DNA of 63,931 nt, the filler included, from Octopus bimaculoides (lineage: Eukaryota): NCBI RefSeq assembly GCF_001194135.2. It is 5 parts of 5 records of this genome, joined end to end, with 100 filler letters (N's around TTAATTAATTAA, not from the genome) between each part and the next. Parts side by side here need not be neighbours in the genome. Positions count along the whole stretch, not along the records: positions 30,097 to 53,995 come from NC_068989.1; 4 more parts are not named here. One strand, written 5' to 3'. Below the pieces are notes generated by a model. It was given only the letters and a program-made list of their open reading frames with translations. It made no database searches and was not told the origin of the DNA. Position numbers and translations under genes: made by a program. Shown here one piece after another: positions 30,122-50,472 of this stretch; position 1 is the stretch's first letter; each line of letters starts with the position of its first letter.

Positions 30122-31353
30122 ATGGCAAAAGAGACAAACAATACTGTGTTGGAGTGGGAGATTGTCCCACCCAAACAGTGGATGAAAGACTTTGAAGAGA
30201 GGACAATGGTGTTAAGGATTTACTCAAAGTCGCTCAACACCATCGCCCTCTTTCAAAAGACTCAAATTAAAAAAGAGTTGGCAGAGTATTTGCCAACTAT
30301 TGAATTCATCTCCAGGGGAGATCAAATATGCAACGGTGTGGTTGCTATTTGACACTCCTGAGGAGGTTCGCAAATTTGCAAGCCAGCCCTTAGAAGGCAA
30401 AGAGATTTTGTTTCTTACCACGTATTGTGGGAAGAAGCTGAAAGAGCTTGGGTCTGCAGGTTGCCACCCGAGATAGAACCCAAGTGGATAGAGGACACTA
30501 TCCGCTGGGGTCTGGGTGGCAGCAGATCCAAGCTGCTTAATGTTAAAATTTTGCTGGCAGCTGATTGGGTTGGGTCAAAAGCTGTTTTGACTCTGTGGAC
30601 CCAATCAGCCAAGAATCTGGTTTTACCAGATTTTTTGAAAATGGCCGGTTGCAGATACCTGGTGATACTTGAAGGATGCCCCCCAAGCGTCACCTATACC
30701 TGGAACCGGGCCACATTAAAAAGAACTGTCCCCAGGACCATAGTAGAGTCCTGGAGCAGTTGGTTGTGGAAGAGCCCCCACCNNNNNNNNNNNNNNNNNN
30801 NNNNNNNNNNNNNNNNNNNNNNNNNNNNNNNNNNTGGAGGTAGAGACCTCTCCGAAAAAAGGGGGGAAAAAAGGTAGAAGGTGGGAAACAATGGTTGCTC
30901 ACCGAAGGATCCTAAAGCTGCGGGAGGGAAGGATGATCTTCCGGTTAAAGCAGAGAAACCACCCCCTCCTGTATCAAAGGCAAGAAAAATAATGGGACAG
31001 CGCCGGTAGGTAGCAGTACACTGCCGGCATGTCCCGAAACCTCATCGGTAGGAATTGTGCCACCAACAGAGGAAACTGTGGCCCCTCCCAGTATAATAAA
31101 TGAGGAATTTGTGATCTTTCTTAAGGGAGGGGCCATAGAGAACTTTGTGAGAAGTCTGGAAGGTCGGGAACAGGTGGTCCTGACCTGCATTGAAAGCCTG
31201 GATTGGCCTCCGCAGGTAGCTGCGGAGGTCATGGAGGAAAATTATTTCTACAGGGTGATGGATTCTTTTACTAAGGAAGAATATAATTATCTCTTATGGG
31301 ACCCCGGCTTGCGACTGCAGGCGGCAAGAGACTTAATTGGGGAGGCAGAGTAA
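30122..31353 (+). mobile_element. Decayed gag-like ORF1 of a non-LTR retrotransposon (Tx1/L1-like); no ORF2 follows
   Basis: GC-rich frameshifted ORFs (RLPPEIEPKWI, LVILEG). An alternative frame near 30678-30732 reads RHLYLEPGHIKKNCP, a degenerate C-x2-C-x4-H-x4-C knuckle. Confidence 0.6.
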
Positions 31354-31500: not shown

Positions 31501-31584
31501 GTTTTCGGCGGGTGTTGGCTGCTTCCCCCACCAACCATCTCTTTATCATTCCATCATCATCATTGTGTCTGTGTCCAGCCCGCA

Positions 31585-31765
31585 GAAATGCTTAGCAGTA
31601 TTTCGTCTGTCTTTATGTTCTGAGATCAAATTTCAGCGAGGTCGACTTTACCTTTCATCCTTTCGGGATCGAAAAATTAAGTACCAGTTGCATACTGAGG
31701 CCGATCTAATCGACTACCCCCTCCCCAAAAATTTTGAGCCTTGTGCCTAGAGTAGAAAAGAATAT
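31585..31765 (+). mobile_element. SINE family A copy
   Basis: GAAATGCTTAGC..GTCGACTTTACCTTTCATCCTTTCGGGATCGAAAAATTAAGTACCAG. Confidence 0.85.
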
Positions 31766-33854: not shown

Positions 33855-33963
33855 CTTCTGGCAAGTCTTCCAAACACTCAAACGTGATTTCGAATTGGAA
33901 CGGATTCAAAAAAGGTGAAGGATTATCTAGGACGACCACATTGCTAATGTTAACTTTGGCCAT
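33855..33963 (-). CDS. ASF1: Histone chaperone ASF1, first coding exon (109 nt); later exons not found in this piece
   Basis: Translates MAKVNISNVVVLDNPSPFLNPFQFEITFECLEDLPE, near-identical to the ASF1 N-terminus. Ends GAAG|GTGAG (phase 1); as I recall, the 109-nt length matches vertebrate ASF1A coding exon 1. Confidence 0.97.
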
Positions 33964-35330
33964 GATGAATTTGTGGTGAGACTGGAGCAATTAGAAACCT
34001 CGCCGACACAATGGTGGTGAGAAAGAAAGGAAGAAAAAAAAGGCAACAATATTCGATAGACTATATTTACATAAAGACTTGGTGGAGAGGAAAATAACTC
34101 ATCAACTCCGTAAAATAGGGGGGAATGCGCCGCTTTGAAGAAAATGGCGCGAAAAGATGATCCAAAGCTTCTCCCCCTCCTCCTCTTCTCACTAGAAGAA
34201 GGAAAAAACAAGAGGAAAAGCAAAACATCCTAAGTGATATGTATATATATATAAACTGTTGTTTCATTGGTTGATAGTGCTAGAAGTGAAACTAAAATTC
34301 ATTCTGATTGGATGGTAGTTTTGCCACTGTGTTAAGAAGAAATATATAAATTTTACTTATAATTGTTTCAAATTTGGCACAAGACCAGTAATTTTCGAGG
34401 GAGAGGGCTTGCCGATTATATCGATCCCAGTACTTGACTGGGACTTTATTTTGTCAACAGAGAAAAGATAAGAGATACAGTTGACTTCGACGGTACATCA
34501 ACTCAGAATGTAATGAGCCGGGAGAAATGTTACTAAGTATTTCGTCCGATGTGTTTAATAGTTTTTAAACATATGCAAAGTGATAAAAAAAAAAAAATTT
34601 GGTGGGAGGTGTACGAGTGCTTATTGACTCTATACTTTACTAGTCCTTATTTTATCGAGCCAAGAAAAATGAAAGATAAAGTCATCTTCGGTGAGGTTTG
34701 AACTGAGAATGGAAAGGGACATAATTTAAATACCGCAAGGCATTTTTGATAATAATAATAATAATTCATGAAATAGCAAAAAACCTGTTTGTTTTTTTTT
34801 TATGTGTGTGTAGTGGAAGAGGGTTGATATTGTGTGTGTGTGTATTATTGACGTCAGAGAACGCCTGTCTGATGACAGATGTGGGTTCGAGTCCCAAGTG
34901 GAACCTTCGACTTTTTCTATCCAAAATGTTTTTTTAACCCAATATTTACACGTTACTTTTTATAGTTTATCAGCTTCAAATATCCAACGTTCCAAGCAAG
35001 AATTATATGTATATCGGTTGATCCAGATGACTGGAGTTTCTCCGGCGTCTGGTCGGTTCATCAGACAGACTAAATTGGATCAGTTACATAAGGACATTGA
35101 CACACGCGCGCGCACACATCTACATATGTATGTTGGTAGTGCGTGTATGTGTTACGATACCATGTCAATTTCCGCTATGTCAGCACCATTGGAAATTGAC
35201 AAGTTACTATGTATCAACTTCCGCTTCGTCGTCATCACAGGAAGTTGATATAGTAGACTTGGTTGTTGTTGCTTTTTAAATACATTCTCTTTTCCTTCGC
35301 TAACGTTTGGAAATCGTTCCGACTAACTTC
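33964..35330. promoter_or_regulatory. Putative divergent promoter / 5' UTR region of ASF1 and the VMAC-like gene
   Basis: CpG-retaining interval upstream of the ASF1 ATG. Contains YY1-like AAAATGGCG (34141), CRE TGACGTCA (34849-34856) and ETS-like ACTTCCG / CAGGAAGT cores (35217-35245). TSS positions are inferred, not observed. Confidence 0.55.
34370..34745 (-). mobile_element. Two decayed SINE family A copies between the ASF1 5' region and the palindrome pair
   Basis: GCACAAGACC..CGATCCCAGTACTTGACTG..AACTCAGAATGTAA and TTTTATCGA..GAAAGATAAAGTC..TTTGAACTGAGAA. Confidence 0.7.
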
Positions 35331-36339
35331 ATTGCATCTATAAACGAATTTTGCCCCCCAAAACAACCAGATCCATTGTAAAGGTGTTGCTATCACTATA
35401 ATGATATTCCTTTGCTTGTGCCGTCTCTTGAACATAAATTGAAGTTCGTTGCTGGATTTAAAAGTGAAAGCAAACCATTCTACAAACCGCATCAGTTTCA
35501 GATCTCTTTCAGGTTGGTTCTCCATGCTTCCTTTCGAAATATCTTTATATTCTTCTGTAATTGAAGTTGGGGTTGCCTCCCAATTTTTTCTTTCATAGTT
35601 CTCTTTCTGTGGATTTTTTCAGAGTAAAATTACCGTTTTCAGTACTAACAAAATGGTTTTCCAAACAAGAACACCTGAGGTCATAACACCTGTTAGAAAT
35701 AACAGTCAAATCACCCTCAAACGACTCCCTACGGTCTTTAAAAATAAAAATAGCCCGTTGTATAATGAACCCATACTGTCTTAAATTAATACACCGATGG
35801 GCATGATTAGGAGATATTGTGTTGCTCGCTTCCACCCAACGAGAACAGAGCTGCCCTTGGACTAAACTAGAGGTATATTCTGTATTATATATTTGTTATA
35901 GATAGCATAAGCCAATGAATGGGTCCCTACGCAATTATATGATCTTACTACTAGATATAACAGCCAAATCACCCTCAGGTCTTTAAAAGGAAGAGCTTTT
36001 TCAATAATGTGGATTGTCACGGTGGGAAACGTTTGATCATATATCTGCTGGATCAGAGCTGACCCGGAACCAAACAACACTAGCAACAACAAAATAGACT
36101 ATTATAAATTAGAATTCAACCCAGAAAAGCTTTATTTTGAAGGTGTTACCAGTGAACTATATTCTTGCCTTTTATATCATATTTACATAATTATTGCTGT
36201 CGAGAATTTCCTTTGCAACTTCTGTTCATTATGCTGCTTCGTTTTTCTTTTGATATGTTTTATCGCTTTAAAATTTAAATAAATCCTCAAAAAGAAATAC
36301 GCTTCATTATTAATTCTATGAGTACTAAGCTATGAATTT

Positions 36340-36480
36340 TGCTGGGAGTGTGTGAACCCCTTCCAGTACTTGATTGGTACTTTATCTCCCGCTCCTAGGA
36401 ATATGAAAACTAAAGTCGATACCGTTGGGATTTGAACTCAGACTGTAGGGACTAAAAATATACTGCAAGTTAGATTTATC
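36340..36480 (-). mobile_element. SINE family A copy (decayed)
   Basis: CCAGTACTTGATTGGTACTT..AAAGTCGA..GATTTGAACTCAGA. Confidence 0.65.
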
Positions 36481-36922
36481 AATCGCTGTGTCGATTCTAT
36501 CAACCGGCCGTCACTAAAATGGCCCCAGCTCGGTAGAAATAACTCTAAAACACCCCCACTCGCTTTCTCTGTTTTCATTTTTCTGACCCGGGTTCTCACT
36601 TGTTCGGTCACTTTGTTTACAGTGACCGAACAACAAGTGAGAACCGTGTAGTGTCAAATGCTTAGGTGTACAGCAACATTTTTTGTCTTTCAATGTGCTT
36701 GGGATATTCAAAATCCAACAAGAAAGAAAAGAAGCTTCCAAATTTCTCCCAAAGATAAGTAAACACGGTGGAATTGTGGATAACCCAGAGACATGTCTGA
36801 GGGATGGAGAAGCTTACTTCCCAAACATACTGAGTTCGACCCCGCTATGCCATAGCTTTTTTGATTTACAGATTTTTTTCGTCATTTGTCTAAGAGGAAC
36901 TTCCCGGTAGTCTGTTACGTGC

Positions 36923-36960
<38 letters not shown>

Positions 36961-36965
36961 ACACT

Positions 36966-37166
36966 CAAGGGCTTACTGAAATGTTCCTGGCTTTAAGGGT
37001 GTCGCGAAAGGCCTGGTTGGAAGCCCAACCTTCCGAGTTCGTTTACAGGGCTTGGAAAAACTGAAGGCCCGCTCCTATAAGTTTGTGAATTTGAGAGGGA
37101 AATATGTTGAATTAATTCTCCTGTATTTTCTGTTACTCAAAGCCAAGAACTTTTCAGCACCCCTTG
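36966..37166 (+). mobile_element. mariner-derived MITE / internal deletion derivative
   Basis: About 28-bp TIRs (CAAGGGCTTACTGAAATGTTCCTGGCTTT / AAAGCCAAGAACTTTTCAGCACCCCTTG). Internal GLEKLKARSYKFVNLRGKYVE matches the mariner transposase C-terminus. Confidence 0.85.
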
Positions 37167-37564: not shown

Positions 37565-37770
37565 TCTCTAGGCACAAGACCTGAAATTATGGGGGAGGGG
37601 GACCAGTCGATTAGATCGGCCCAGTACGCAACTGGTACTTAATTTATCGATCCCGAAAGGATGAAAGGCAAAGTCGAGCTCGCTGGAATTTGATCTCAGA
37701 ACATAAAGACAGACGAAATACTGCTAAGCATTTCGCCCGGCGTGCTAACGTTTCTGCAAGCTCGCCTTTA
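37565..37770 (-). mobile_element. SINE family A copy, young and CpG-rich
   Basis: CTGGTACTTAATTTATCGATCCCGAAAGGATGAAAGGCAAAGTCGA...GCCCGGCGTGCTAACGTTTCTGC. Confidence 0.9.
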
Positions 37771-37984
37771 CGCTCTATTAATTCTACCAATCCACTGCTT
37801 TTTCAGATGAATGAATGAATCATTTTTTTTAATGACAAGGAATTCTCTTGTTGGATGGGAGAAAAAAAATTCATGTTGCATATTAATTAGTTTATTTTTT
37901 TACTAAATATTGTTTTGGGTTTTTTTTAAAATTCCATTATGTATTCAAATTCTGGGAAAACAGTTTTTCTATATTATTTTACTT

Positions 37985-38968: not shown

Positions 38969-39074
38969 GTCAAGTCATTTTTAATTATACATTTCCCATA
39001 TGTTAAAGAATAAAATACATTTAACATATTAGAATATATTTCTTATATGTGTATATTGTGTATATCTCTGACAA

Positions 39075-48464: not shown

Positions 48465-48680
48465 ATAGCGAGCTGGCTGAATCATTAACACGCTGGACAA
48501 AATGCTTAACAGCATTTTGTCCTTGTTTGCGTTCTGAGCTAAACTTTTGCCAAGGTCAACTTTACCTTCTGTTCTTCTGGGGTTGATAAAATAAGCACCT
48601 GTCAAGCATTGGGGTTGATGTAATTGACTTACTCCCACCCCCAAAATTACTGGTATTGTGCCAAAATTTGAAACGAATAT
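48465..48680 (+). mobile_element. SINE family A copy, CpG-depleted
   Basis: GCGAGCTGGCTGAATCATTAAC...GGGGTTGATAAAATAAGCACC. Confidence 0.8.
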
Positions 48681-49930: not shown

Positions 49931-50244
49931 ACTAAAGGATCCTCTTCAAAATATTCAACATAAATTCCAGATAAAAATATTTTTGTGTAATACTTGCCTG
50001 AGTTGTCAAATTTTACTGTGAAAATTAAATCAATAAAATCTTTGTAAATGTTTAAGATTTACAGCTTAGAGCTTTCGTGATTTGCCTCTCTGACTGTCAC
50101 ATACATCATACAAGATTGGCCCTCAAGTAAGTTTGACAGGAAGAAAAAAATTATTTAAAAAAAAGAATCTCTTTTATTGATTTAATCTCTCTAGGTTGTA
50201 ACAGATTTATCACTATTTCCTTCTTTTTCAGACTGACATCATCC

Positions 50245-50472
50245 ATGTCTGAGGGGAAAGATATGTTTCCCCGATCAACAATCCAAGAAGCCAACCGGCA
50301 CTTGCAGGCACTCTACCACAGAGTTGACGAACTGGAAAGCATCATAAATGAGCAACAGTTGAAGCAGTTGGCTGCCGATGAAGCCTTTAAAGAAAAAATA
50401 AATGAAATCAATCGCAACCATGAAGCTGAAGGGAAGGTGTTGGACATGAGATTAAGAGATTTAGAAAAAGAT
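50245..50472 (+). CDS. VMAC: VMAC-like (vimentin-type intermediate filament-associated coiled-coil) protein, first coding exon; exon starts at 50232
   Basis: Acceptor ttccttctttttcag| at 50231, ATG at 50245, donor GAT|GTCAGT after 50472. Peptide STIQEANRHLQALYHRVDELE resembles the human VMAC N-terminus (IREANAHLAAVHRRAAELE), followed by coiled-coil heptads. Confidence 0.8.

What the first reader, a model, noticed from the sequence alone, without database searches (positions are those of the whole stretch)
35163..35250. Twin 11-17-11 palindromes at 49-bp spacing between the ASF1 and VMAC-like genes
Seen: TGTCAATTTCC-N17-GGAAATTGACA (35163-35201) and TATCAACTTCC-N17-GGAAGTTGATA (35212-35250). 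Both arms are perfect 11-bp inverted repeats and both spacers are exactly 17 nt starting GCT. The two arm differences between units (G/A and T/C) are mirrored in the partner arms, while the rest of the spacer diverges. A neutral tandem duplication would not be expected to keep symmetry and spacing while the spacers drift. Arms carry ETS-like cores (ATTTCCG, ACTTCCG, CAGGAAGT). Inference: a symmetric site for a dimeric DNA-binding protein or a conserved RNA hairpin pair (or a transposon-end relic) in a housekeeping promoter. I know no description of this architecture.
Basis: partly seen in the sequence, partly recalled or inferred. Interest (0 to 1): 0.7.

Follow-up and report, generated by a model that had tools for sequence, protein, structure and literature searches.

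The report
Paired ETS-type sites in an octopus promoter
The two perfect palindromes are real, but they are the octopus version of an old, conserved promoter module made of inverted ETS-type binding sites just upstream of a small coiled-coil gene, so this is an ordinary kind of regulatory element in an unusually tidy form.

Summary
Two perfect 11-17-11 inverted repeats lie at 35163-35201 and 35212-35250, with none expected by chance. They are about 1.2 kb from the ASF1 start codon and about 850 bp beyond ASF1's own conserved E2F/CCAAT promoter.

Orthologous loci show what is conserved:
- Octopus vulgaris has both units, but unit 1 is imperfect (a T·G in the arms) and unit 2 is 12-15-12.
- Argonauta hians has unit 2 as 10-8-10, built from two consensus ETS sites (ACCGGAAGTT), and only a decayed unit 1.
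- More distant cephalopod-like loci have ACTTCC-N11-GGAAAT followed by a full CRE.

The conserved parts are the inverted GGAA cores, a YGTCA half-site in each spacer, and the linker TTGACAAGTTACTA. The 11-bp symmetry and the 17-nt spacing are not conserved.

Best reading: a tandemly duplicated proximal-promoter module bound by ETS-family factors (GABP-type), perhaps with CREB/ATF. The perfect arms are lineage-specific. Shared extended half-sites, template-switch homogenisation, or both could explain them.

A hairpin function is not excluded, because every near-miss in the arms is a G·T on the + strand. It is the minority reading. The element is not a transposon relic.

The parts
35163..35173 (.). 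Unit 1 left arm, TGTCAATTTCC. Its reverse complement, GCGGAAATTGACA with the inner flank, is a weak ETS-type site.
   Evidence: Identical in O. vulgaris. In Argonauta only a decayed TTCACTTTT remains.
35174..35190 (.). Unit 1 spacer, 17 nt, holding TGTCAGC (35178-35184), a CRE-like half-site.
   Evidence: Argonauta has GCGTCAGC at the matching place.
35191..35201 (.). Unit 1 right arm, GGAAATTGACA.
   Evidence: O. vulgaris has GGAAGTTGACA and Argonauta GAAAGTTGACA, so the A that makes the arm perfect is derived in the window's lineage.
35196..35209 (.). TTGACAAGTTACTA, made of the outer half of the unit 1 right arm plus the linker. This is the longest stretch identical in the window, O. vulgaris and Argonauta.
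   Evidence: Alignment A1 and the blastn block 35190-35251 against L011 6447-6387, E = 3e-4.
35212..35222 (.). Unit 2 left arm, TATCAACTTCC. Its reverse complement GCGGAAGT is a strong ETS-type site.
   Evidence: AACTTCCG is kept in O. vulgaris, Argonauta and L007-L010; L001 has TACTTCCG. GCGGAAGT is the second most enriched ETS 8-mer at human promoters (PMC2787013, Table 2).
35223..35239 (.). Unit 2 spacer, 17 nt, holding CGTCA (35230-35234), a CRE half-site, inside TCGTCGTCATCA.
   Evidence: Argonauta's spacer is ACGTCACA.
35240..35250 (.). Unit 2 right arm, GGAAGTTGATA. With its inner flank it reads CAGGAAGT, a strong ETS-type site.
   Evidence: O. vulgaris and Argonauta have CCGGAAGT, the ETS family consensus (PMC2787013).
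35276..35283 (+). TATA-like TTTAAATA, followed by the conserved TTCGCTAAC (35296-35304). This is the inferred core promoter and start region of the + strand gene.
   Evidence: Read. Identical in O. vulgaris; Argonauta has AATACATT and TTCGCTAA. The start site itself is inferred, not shown.
35305..35512 (+). Exon 1 of the small coiled-coil gene. The 5' end is uncertain. The splice donor is CAG|GTTGGT after 35512.
   Evidence: O. vulgaris protein P0244 (CAI9727892.1) joins the orthologous exon (L012 11412-11486) to the coding exon. Argonauta's annotated 5' end at L011 6200 maps by eye on alignment A1 to about window 35453.
50232..50472 (+). Exon 2 of the coiled-coil gene, with the ATG at 50245 (MSEGKDMFPRSTIQEANRHLQALY...).
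   Evidence: It is 95% identical to the O. vulgaris protein P0121.
33855..33963 (-). Coding part of ASF1 exon 1 (MAKVNISNVVVLDNPSPFLNPFQFEITFECLEDLPE).
   Evidence: Pfam PF04729 is recorded on the homologues.
34127..34326 (-). ASF1's own promoter. It holds the E2F-like GGCGCGAAAA (34146-34155) and two CCAAT boxes (34266-34270 and 34307-34311).
   Evidence: Conserved in Argonauta and in L001 and L010.

Best explanation
The twin palindromes are the Octopus-lineage form of an old proximal-promoter module of the small coiled-coil gene that is transcribed rightwards, divergently from ASF1.

Each unit is a pair of inverted ETS-family binding sites (GGAA cores) around a CRE-like half-site (YGTCA). 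Unit 2 carries near-consensus ETS sites (GCGGAAGT and CAGGAAGT). Unit 1 is a weaker, older tandem duplicate.

Inferred mechanism: ETS-family activators of the GABP/ETS1 type bind the inverted sites, perhaps together with a CREB/ATF factor in between. They drive constitutive transcription starting some tens of bases downstream, near a conserved TATA-like box, and possibly in both directions.

The perfect 11-bp arms and the equal 17-nt spacers are lineage-specific detail, not the constrained feature. All four arms match one extended half-site, GGAARTTGAYA. In addition, or instead, template switching at quasi-palindromes may have homogenised the arms.

Shown: position, conservation and motif content. 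Inferred: which proteins bind, and where the start site lies.
For: The repeats are real and non-random.

Position:
- The O. vulgaris gene model splices the exon ending at window 35512 to the coding exon at 50232.
- In Argonauta the annotated 5' end of the neighbouring gene lies 192 bp downstream of the palindrome.
- ASF1 has its own conserved E2F/CCAAT promoter 850 bp away.

Conservation:
- Window 35190-35251 is the only block upstream of the coiled-coil gene that aligns with Argonauta (E = 3e-4).
- The region is 96.6% identical to O. vulgaris, against 87-94% in the flanks.

What is kept:
- Argonauta unit 2 is ACCGGAAGTT in both orientations, a 10-8-10 palindrome.
- L001 and L007-L010 keep ACTTCCG-N-CAGGAAATGACGTCA, an inverted ETS pair plus a full CRE.
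- Every spacer holds YGTCA.

What is not kept: arm length, perfection and spacing. TTCC-to-GGAA distances are 17, 14, 11 and 10.

Literature:
- CCGGAAGT, GCGGAAGT and CAGGAAGT are the ETS 8-mers most enriched at human housekeeping promoters (PMC2787013).
- GABP sites are linked to bidirectional promoter activity (PMC2077898).
- Palindromic ETS sites bind Ets-1 cooperatively (PMC2715226, PMC3101357).
Against: - There is no binding, accessibility or start-site data for any cephalopod here, so the factor identity is inferred from motif resemblance to vertebrate data.
- In Argonauta unit 1, both GGAA cores are lost while TTGACAAGTTACTA stays perfect. Something other than an ETS core is therefore constrained in that part.
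- The outer TGAYA extension of the arms is not part of any ETS consensus that I can cite.
- All near-misses in the arms are G·T on the + strand and none are A·C. A pure protein-site model does not predict this.
- In the non-cephalopod mollusc-like loci, only the left ACTTCC is kept in all four.
Confidence: 0.6

Rival explanations
1. The palindromes act as structures. They would be either two hairpins in a + strand transcript (a 5' leader or an upstream RNA of the coiled-coil gene) or cruciform/hairpin DNA at the promoter. Selection would then act on arm pairing rather than on the half-site sequence.
For: - Across six units from three species, 96.9% of arm cells pair. The departures are 5 T·G or G·T on the + strand, 2 non-pairs and no A·C.
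- Both arm differences between the units can be traced through a T·G or G·T intermediate. One path is C-G (Argonauta) to T·G (O. vulgaris) to T-A (window). The other is G-C, G·T (Argonauta unit 2), A-T.
- Argonauta unit 1 changed TTCC/GGAA to TTTT/GAAA on both sides.
- The region folds better than shuffles, with z = -3.8 on + and -4.1 on -.
Against: - Arm length, loop length (8 to 17) and arm register differ between species. One substitution in the window shortened the unit 2 stem from 12 to 11.
- The folding z-scores follow trivially from the inverted repeats.
- The counts come from 6 related sequences and a MAFFT alignment. 8 of 500 shuffles reach the observed values. I estimate about a 0.1 chance for the decayed Argonauta unit 1 arm arising at random.
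- Argonauta's annotated transcript starts downstream of the palindrome.
- There is no Rfam match.
- The conserved cores are exactly ETS consensus sites.
Confidence: 0.15
2. The element is a mutational by-product without its own function. An old tandem duplication was followed by template-switch (quasi-palindrome) correction, which keeps the arms complementary. The apparent conservation would reflect the neighbouring promoter.
For: - Perfect short inverted repeats are about 8 times over-represented in this 24-kb piece, 6 against 0.78 expected. The genome therefore makes them readily.
- Template switching can create and repair perfect stems in a single event (PMC8794818, PMC5453318).
- The unit 1 left arm falls in a 13-nt gap relative to Argonauta.
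- Changes run both towards and away from symmetry.
Against: - Apart from ASF1's exon 1 and promoter, nothing else in the intergenic region aligns between Octopus and Argonauta, yet this block does.
- The parts that are kept are consensus ETS sites and a CRE half-site. These recur in more distant loci without extended palindromy.
Confidence: 0.15
3. The element is a site for an unknown symmetric dimeric factor that reads the whole 11-17-11 unit (half-site GGAARTTGAYA at fixed spacing). The ETS-like cores would be incidental.
For: - Four arms in the window and four in O. vulgaris fit GGAARTTGAYA with equal 17-nt TTCC-to-GGAA distances.
- TTGACA of the unit 1 right arm is invariant to Argonauta.
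Against: - Spacing is 14 in Argonauta and 11 or 10 further out. The outer four bases of unit 2 are not symmetric in Argonauta (TGTT versus GTTA).
- There is no other copy of the half-site pair in about 97 kb of cephalopod sequence held here.
Confidence: 0.07
4. The element is a transposon-end relic or a member of a high-copy repeat family.
For: The surroundings are repeat-rich. There is a tRNA-SINE-like B box near 34884-34894, and dispersed repeat ORFs.
Against: - The element sits at the orthologous position, with conserved flanks, in O. vulgaris and Argonauta.
- There is no second copy in the window or in the fetched loci.
- All JGI metagenome contigs gave one chance-level hit.
- The tandem-repeat finder reports nothing.
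Confidence: 0.03

Closest known systems
Palindromic (head-to-head) ETS-binding sites in promoters, such as human stromelysin-1 (MMP3) and TP53, bound cooperatively by Ets-1 (PMC2715226, PMC3101357)
   Same: Two GGAA cores lie in inverted orientation close to a start site. The flanks match the ETS family consensus (CCGGAAGT, GCGGAAGT, CAGGAAGT).
   Different: As I recall, those sites are about 4 bp apart. Here the cores are 17 nt apart (14, 11 or 10 in relatives), the unit is tandemly duplicated, the arms extend to 11 bp with a non-ETS TGAYA tail, and binding is untested.
GABP/ETS sites of housekeeping and bidirectional promoters (PMC2077898, PMC2787013) and duplicated GGAA motifs near start sites (PMC3101357)
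   Same: Several consensus ETS sites lie between two divergently transcribed genes. One of them, ASF1, is a cell-cycle and housekeeping gene. A CRE-type element accompanies them.
   Different: The two core promoters here are about 1 kb apart, with a repeat-rich stretch between them. Whether the sites serve ASF1 at all is unknown. The GABP beta requirement and the start sites are untested in cephalopods.
ETS-CRE composite element (GGAAGTGACGTCA type), from my memory of work by Hollenhorst and colleagues; not retrieved here
   Same: L001 and L007-L010 carry CAGGAAATGACGTCA at the orthologous place.
   Different: In the window the CRE is reduced to a half-site inside the spacer. The arm reads GGAAGTTGAYA, one base longer and without the second CRE half.
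Quasi-palindromes perfected by template-switch mutation (PMC5453318, PMC8794818, PMC3820800)
   Same: Short inverted repeats whose arms change together. A whole arm (unit 1 left) is missing in an outgroup. Perfect short inverted repeats are in local excess.
   Different: That is a mutational mechanism, not a function. No event could be polarised here with only three octopod sequences.

Membership tests
Paired or palindromic ETS-binding sites in a promoter | GGAA core with flanks matching the ETS family consensus (C/G)(C/A)GGAAGT | tested here: met
   Unit 2 reads GCGGAAGT and CAGGAAGT. O. vulgaris and Argonauta read CCGGAAGT. Compared with Table 2 of PMC2787013. Unit 1 is weaker (GCGGAAAT, TTGGAAAT).
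Paired or palindromic ETS-binding sites in a promoter | Two sites in inverted orientation near a transcription start | tested here: met
   The orientation is read directly. Exon 1 of the + strand gene ends 262 bp downstream. Argonauta's annotated 5' end lies 192 bp downstream of its palindrome.
Paired or palindromic ETS-binding sites in a promoter | Close spacing (about 4 bp) that allows the Ets-1 ternary complex, as in stromelysin-1 | tested here: not met
   The cores are separated by 17 nt here, and by 14, 11 or 10 in relatives.
Paired or palindromic ETS-binding sites in a promoter | Occupancy by an ETS-family protein | not testable with these tools
   No ChIP, DAP-seq or EMSA data are available.
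GABP-type bidirectional promoter | Divergent start sites less than 1 kb apart that share the ETS sites | tested here: inconclusive
   ASF1's conserved E2F/CCAAT promoter ends at 34326 and the palindromes start at 35163. No start sites are mapped.
ETS-CRE composite element | GGAA(G/A)TGACGTCA, with the ETS core abutting a full CRE | tested here: not met
   The window has only a CGTCA or TGTCA half-site in each spacer. The full composite is present in L001 and L007-L010.
Structured RNA family (Rfam) | A match to a curated covariance model | tested here: not met
   There is no match at 35163-35250, even at E <= 1.
MITE or transposon terminal inverted repeat | Multiple dispersed copies, not fixed at an orthologous site | tested here: not met
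   A single locus, orthologous in O. vulgaris and Argonauta, and one chance-level metagenome hit. A whole-genome copy count could not be made.

The most novel reading that the evidence does not exclude
Arm complementarity itself is maintained in octopods. The two units would form hairpins in a + strand transcript or in promoter DNA, and the ETS-like cores would be only part of the story. The support is that every imperfect arm position in three species is a G·T on the + strand, and that both unit-specific arm differences appear to have passed through G·T intermediates. If so, this would be a conserved structured element at the 5' end of a small coiled-coil gene with no described counterpart.
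Probability: 0.15. Interest if true: 0.6.

Novelty: new member of a known kind. Interest (0 to 1): 0.3.

Why it matters
Almost nothing is known about the promoter grammar of cephalopods. This locus gives a concrete conserved module that can be tested directly: inverted ETS-type sites with a CRE half-site, beside an ASF1/coiled-coil gene pair that is kept head-to-head across molluscs. It is also a small natural example of how perfect palindromes arise and decay around binding sites. That example separates what selection keeps (cores, half-site, linker) from what mutation may tidy (arm perfection). It does not point to a new class of element.

Tried and rejected
A chimeric 55-aa query returned only short read-through ORFs.
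- My exact look-up of the window's ASF1 exon ORF used 33960 instead of 33963 as the start. It is therefore an invalid negative.
- Look-ups of P0121 (O. vulgaris, short isoform) and P0131 (O. sinensis ASF1 isoform X2) were not on record. O. sinensis could therefore not be compared. O. vulgaris was reached through the longer isoform P0244.
- An inverted duplicate of ASF1 exon 1 at 35466-35512 was suggested by weak tblastn hits (E = 0.04 and 0.07). No DNA similarity supports it, so it is left as a curiosity.
- No tRNA, no Rfam family and no tandem-repeat call fall on the element.
- Pfam gives no family above cut-off for the coiled-coil protein, so the label "VMAC-like" is unverified.
- The metagenome-wide pattern scan gave one hit in a 1.95-Mb contig. 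My rough expectation by chance was about 0.5.
- A fifth half-site, GGACATTGACA at 35092-35102, is not conserved in O. vulgaris, so I dropped it.
- Deep conservation of the inverted pair outside cephalopods holds in L002 and L003 but not in L013 or L016, where only ACTTCC remains. I make no claim there.
- A literature search for cephalopod promoter-motif data found nothing relevant.

Full report
**Observation.** TGTCAATTTCC-N17-GGAAATTGACA lies at 35163-35201 and TATCAACTTCC-N17-GGAAGTTGATA at 35212-35250, with perfect 11-bp arms and a 49-bp period. The degenerate pattern, allowing up to three mismatches, occurs only at these two places in the window and never in 100 shuffles.

There are two caveats. 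The spacers match at 10 of 17 positions and each holds a YGTCA, so they are not freely drifting. Perfect short inverted repeats are also common in this piece. There are six non-simple ones (arm >=10, spacer 3-30) in 23.9 kb, against 0.78 in dinucleotide shuffles.

**Genomic setting.**
- ASF1 exon 1 is on the minus strand, with its ATG at 33963.
- ASF1's own promoter is an E2F-like GGCGCGAAAA (34146-34155) plus two CCAAT boxes (34266-34270, 34307-34311). It is conserved in Argonauta and in more distant cephalopod-like loci.
- The palindromes lie about 850 bp beyond that promoter.
- To their right are a TATA-like TTTAAATA (35276-35283) and an exon ending at the donor CAG|GTTGGT after 35512.
- The O. 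vulgaris model CAI9727892.1 (P0244) splices the orthologous exon to the coding exon. In the window that coding exon starts at 50232, with its ATG at 50245.
- The palindromes therefore sit in the proximal promoter of this small coiled-coil gene.
- Pfam does not confirm the label "VMAC-like".

**Relatives.**
- By non-coding identity (89.6% over 3.5 kb) the window is an Octopus species about 10% diverged from O. vulgaris.
- I reached the orthologous loci through read-through ORFs and annotated proteins:
  - O. vulgaris is L012.
  - Argonauta hians is L011.
  - Three unidentified cephalopod-like sources are L001, L007-L009 and L010.
  - Four non-cephalopod mollusc-like sources are L002, L003-L006, L013-L015 and L016.
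- All of them keep ASF1 and the coiled-coil gene head to head.

**What is conserved.**
- *O. vulgaris.* It has both units. Unit 1 is imperfect: left arm TGTCAATTTCC against right arm GGAAGTTGACA, which gives a T·G. Unit 2 is a 12-15-12 palindrome, because its inner flank is CCGG.
- *Argonauta, unit 2.* It is AACTTCCGGT-ACGTCACA-ACCGGAAGTT. This is a 10-8-10 palindrome made of two consensus ETS sites. It lies 192 bp upstream of the annotated 5' end of the neighbouring gene.
- *Argonauta, unit 1.* It survives as GCGTCAGC-TCT-GAAAGTTGACA with a decayed left arm (TTCACTTTT). Both GGAA cores are gone, yet TTGACAAGTTACTA is identical in all three species.
- *Alignability.* Window 35190-35251 is the only block upstream of the coiled-coil gene that still aligns with Argonauta (E = 3e-4). 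The rest of the intergenic region, apart from ASF1's exon and promoter, does not align.
- *More distant cephalopod-like loci.* They carry ACTTCCG-N-CAGGAAATGACGTCA, an inverted ETS pair with an 11-nt gap abutting a full CRE.
- *Non-cephalopod mollusc-like loci.* They keep AAACTTCC-N10, followed by GGAA in two sources but not in the other two.

The durable features are therefore the inverted GGAA cores with ETS-consensus flanks, a CRE-type half-site and the linker. Arm length, arm perfection and spacing (17, 14, 11, 10) vary.

**Direction of change.** The window and O. vulgaris differ at three positions in the 88 bp, and Argonauta serves as outgroup. One change (G to A in the unit 1 right arm) made unit 1 perfect in the window. 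One (C to A in the unit 2 inner flank) shortened the unit 2 palindrome from 12 to 11 while keeping a good ETS site (CAGGAAGT). One falls in the unit 1 spacer. This gives no net drive towards symmetry. The region is 96.6% identical to O. vulgaris, against 87-94% in the flanks. That is suggestive only.

**Interpretation.**
- The most economical reading is a tandemly duplicated promoter module of inverted ETS-family sites with a CRE-like half-site.
- It would be bound by GABP/ETS-type activators and possibly CREB/ATF. It would drive the coiled-coil gene and perhaps contribute to divergent transcription.
- CCGGAAGT, GCGGAAGT and CAGGAAGT are the ETS 8-mers most enriched at human housekeeping promoters (PMC2787013).
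- GABP sites are linked to bidirectional activity (PMC2077898).
- Palindromic ETS sites are known in the stromelysin-1, TP53 and CRYAB promoters (PMC2715226, PMC3101357).
- Factor identity and start site are inferred, not shown.

**Why the arms are perfect.** Two explanations are compatible with each other. All arms may fit one extended half-site, GGAARTTGAYA. If two positions are two-fold degenerate, mirrored differences in both units would arise by chance about 1 time in 16, and O. vulgaris already breaks one of them. Alternatively, template switching at quasi-palindromes can create or repair perfect arms in one event (PMC8794818, PMC5453318, PMC3820800). This fits the local excess of perfect inverted repeats and the 13-nt gap covering the unit 1 left arm in Argonauta.

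**The reading I cannot exclude.**
- Across six units, 96.9% of arm cells pair. The seven departures are five T·G or G·T on the + strand and two non-pairs, with no A·C.
- Both unit-specific arm differences appear to have passed through G·T intermediates.
- Argonauta unit 1 changed TTCC/GGAA to TTTT/GAAA on both sides.
- This is what a + strand hairpin under selection would look like.
- The evidence is thin. It rests on six related sequences and a MAFFT alignment, and 8 of 500 shuffles reach the observed values.
- Loop and stem lengths differ between species. Argonauta's annotated transcript starts downstream. There is no Rfam match.
- The favourable folding energies follow trivially from the repeats.

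**Rejected.** A transposon relic or high-copy repeat is not supported. The element has an orthologous position, no second copy in about 97 kb of cephalopod sequence held here, one chance-level hit in all JGI metagenome contigs, and no tandem-repeat call.

**Verdict.**
- The feature is real, conserved and probably functional.
- It is a new example of a known kind of promoter architecture, not a new kind of element.
- Interest is modest.
- The open point worth a cheap follow-up is whether the region is transcribed, and whether the G·T-only pattern holds in more octopods.

Noticed in passing
window 33855-35512; L001, L002-L006, L010, L011, L012, L013-L016: ASF1 and a small coiled-coil protein gene (N-terminus M..RSTIQEANRHLQALY or MLSRSSIDEANRHLYAM) are arranged head to head in every mollusc-like locus fetched. 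ATG-to-ATG distances range from about 0.45 kb in the compact loci to about 16 kb here, where an intron separates exon 1 from the ATG. This looks like a deeply conserved divergent gene pair.
   Followed up: partly
window 34127-34326: ASF1's own promoter holds the E2F-like GGCGCGAAAA and two CCAAT boxes 41 bp apart. It is conserved to Argonauta and to the L001 and L010 loci. This is a typical layout for a cell-cycle gene promoter.
   Followed up: partly
window 35466-35512 (+) compared with 33880-33930 (-): Read in frame, exon 1 of the coiled-coil gene (KPFYKPHQFQISF) weakly resembles the ASF1 exon-1 peptide SPFLNPFQFEITF. The tblastn E-values are 0.04 and 0.07 in two species. There is no detectable DNA similarity. 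It is either chance or a very old inverted duplication.
   Followed up: partly
window 30560-30609, 36591-36645, 38998-39029, 48495-48522: Four further non-simple perfect inverted repeats (arms 10-14 bp) lie in the same 24-kb piece. With the two studied here, that is about 8 times the shuffled expectation. The one at 38998 is also present in O. vulgaris (L012 15185).
   Followed up: partly
window 36436-37044: About 600 bp does not align with O. vulgaris. It holds a nested perfect palindrome (14-27-14 and 13-8-13) at 36591-36645. This may be a lineage-specific insertion of a small mobile element.
   Followed up: no
window ~34850-34910; ~31560-31700 (+) and ~37650-37790 (-): A tRNA-like B box (GGTTCGAGTCC, 34884-34894) suggests a SINE fragment between the two promoters. 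Nearly identical ORF peptides (CLAVFRLSLCSEIKFQR...) on opposite strands mark a dispersed repeat.
   Followed up: no
L012 10001-10006: The O. vulgaris gene model CAI9727892.1 begins with a 6-nt coding exon (ATGGTG|GTGAG) only 48 bp from the ASF1 ATG. This is probably a prediction artefact. The likely true start codon is the MSEGKD methionine in the next coding exon.
   Followed up: partly
L011 6480-6545 (Argonauta): Just upstream of the Argonauta palindrome lie a CCAAT box, GCGCATG, a full CRE (TGACGTCA) and a further CGTCA-AGTTGGATA that looks like a third degenerate unit. This hints at an ancestral array of more than two units.
   Followed up: no
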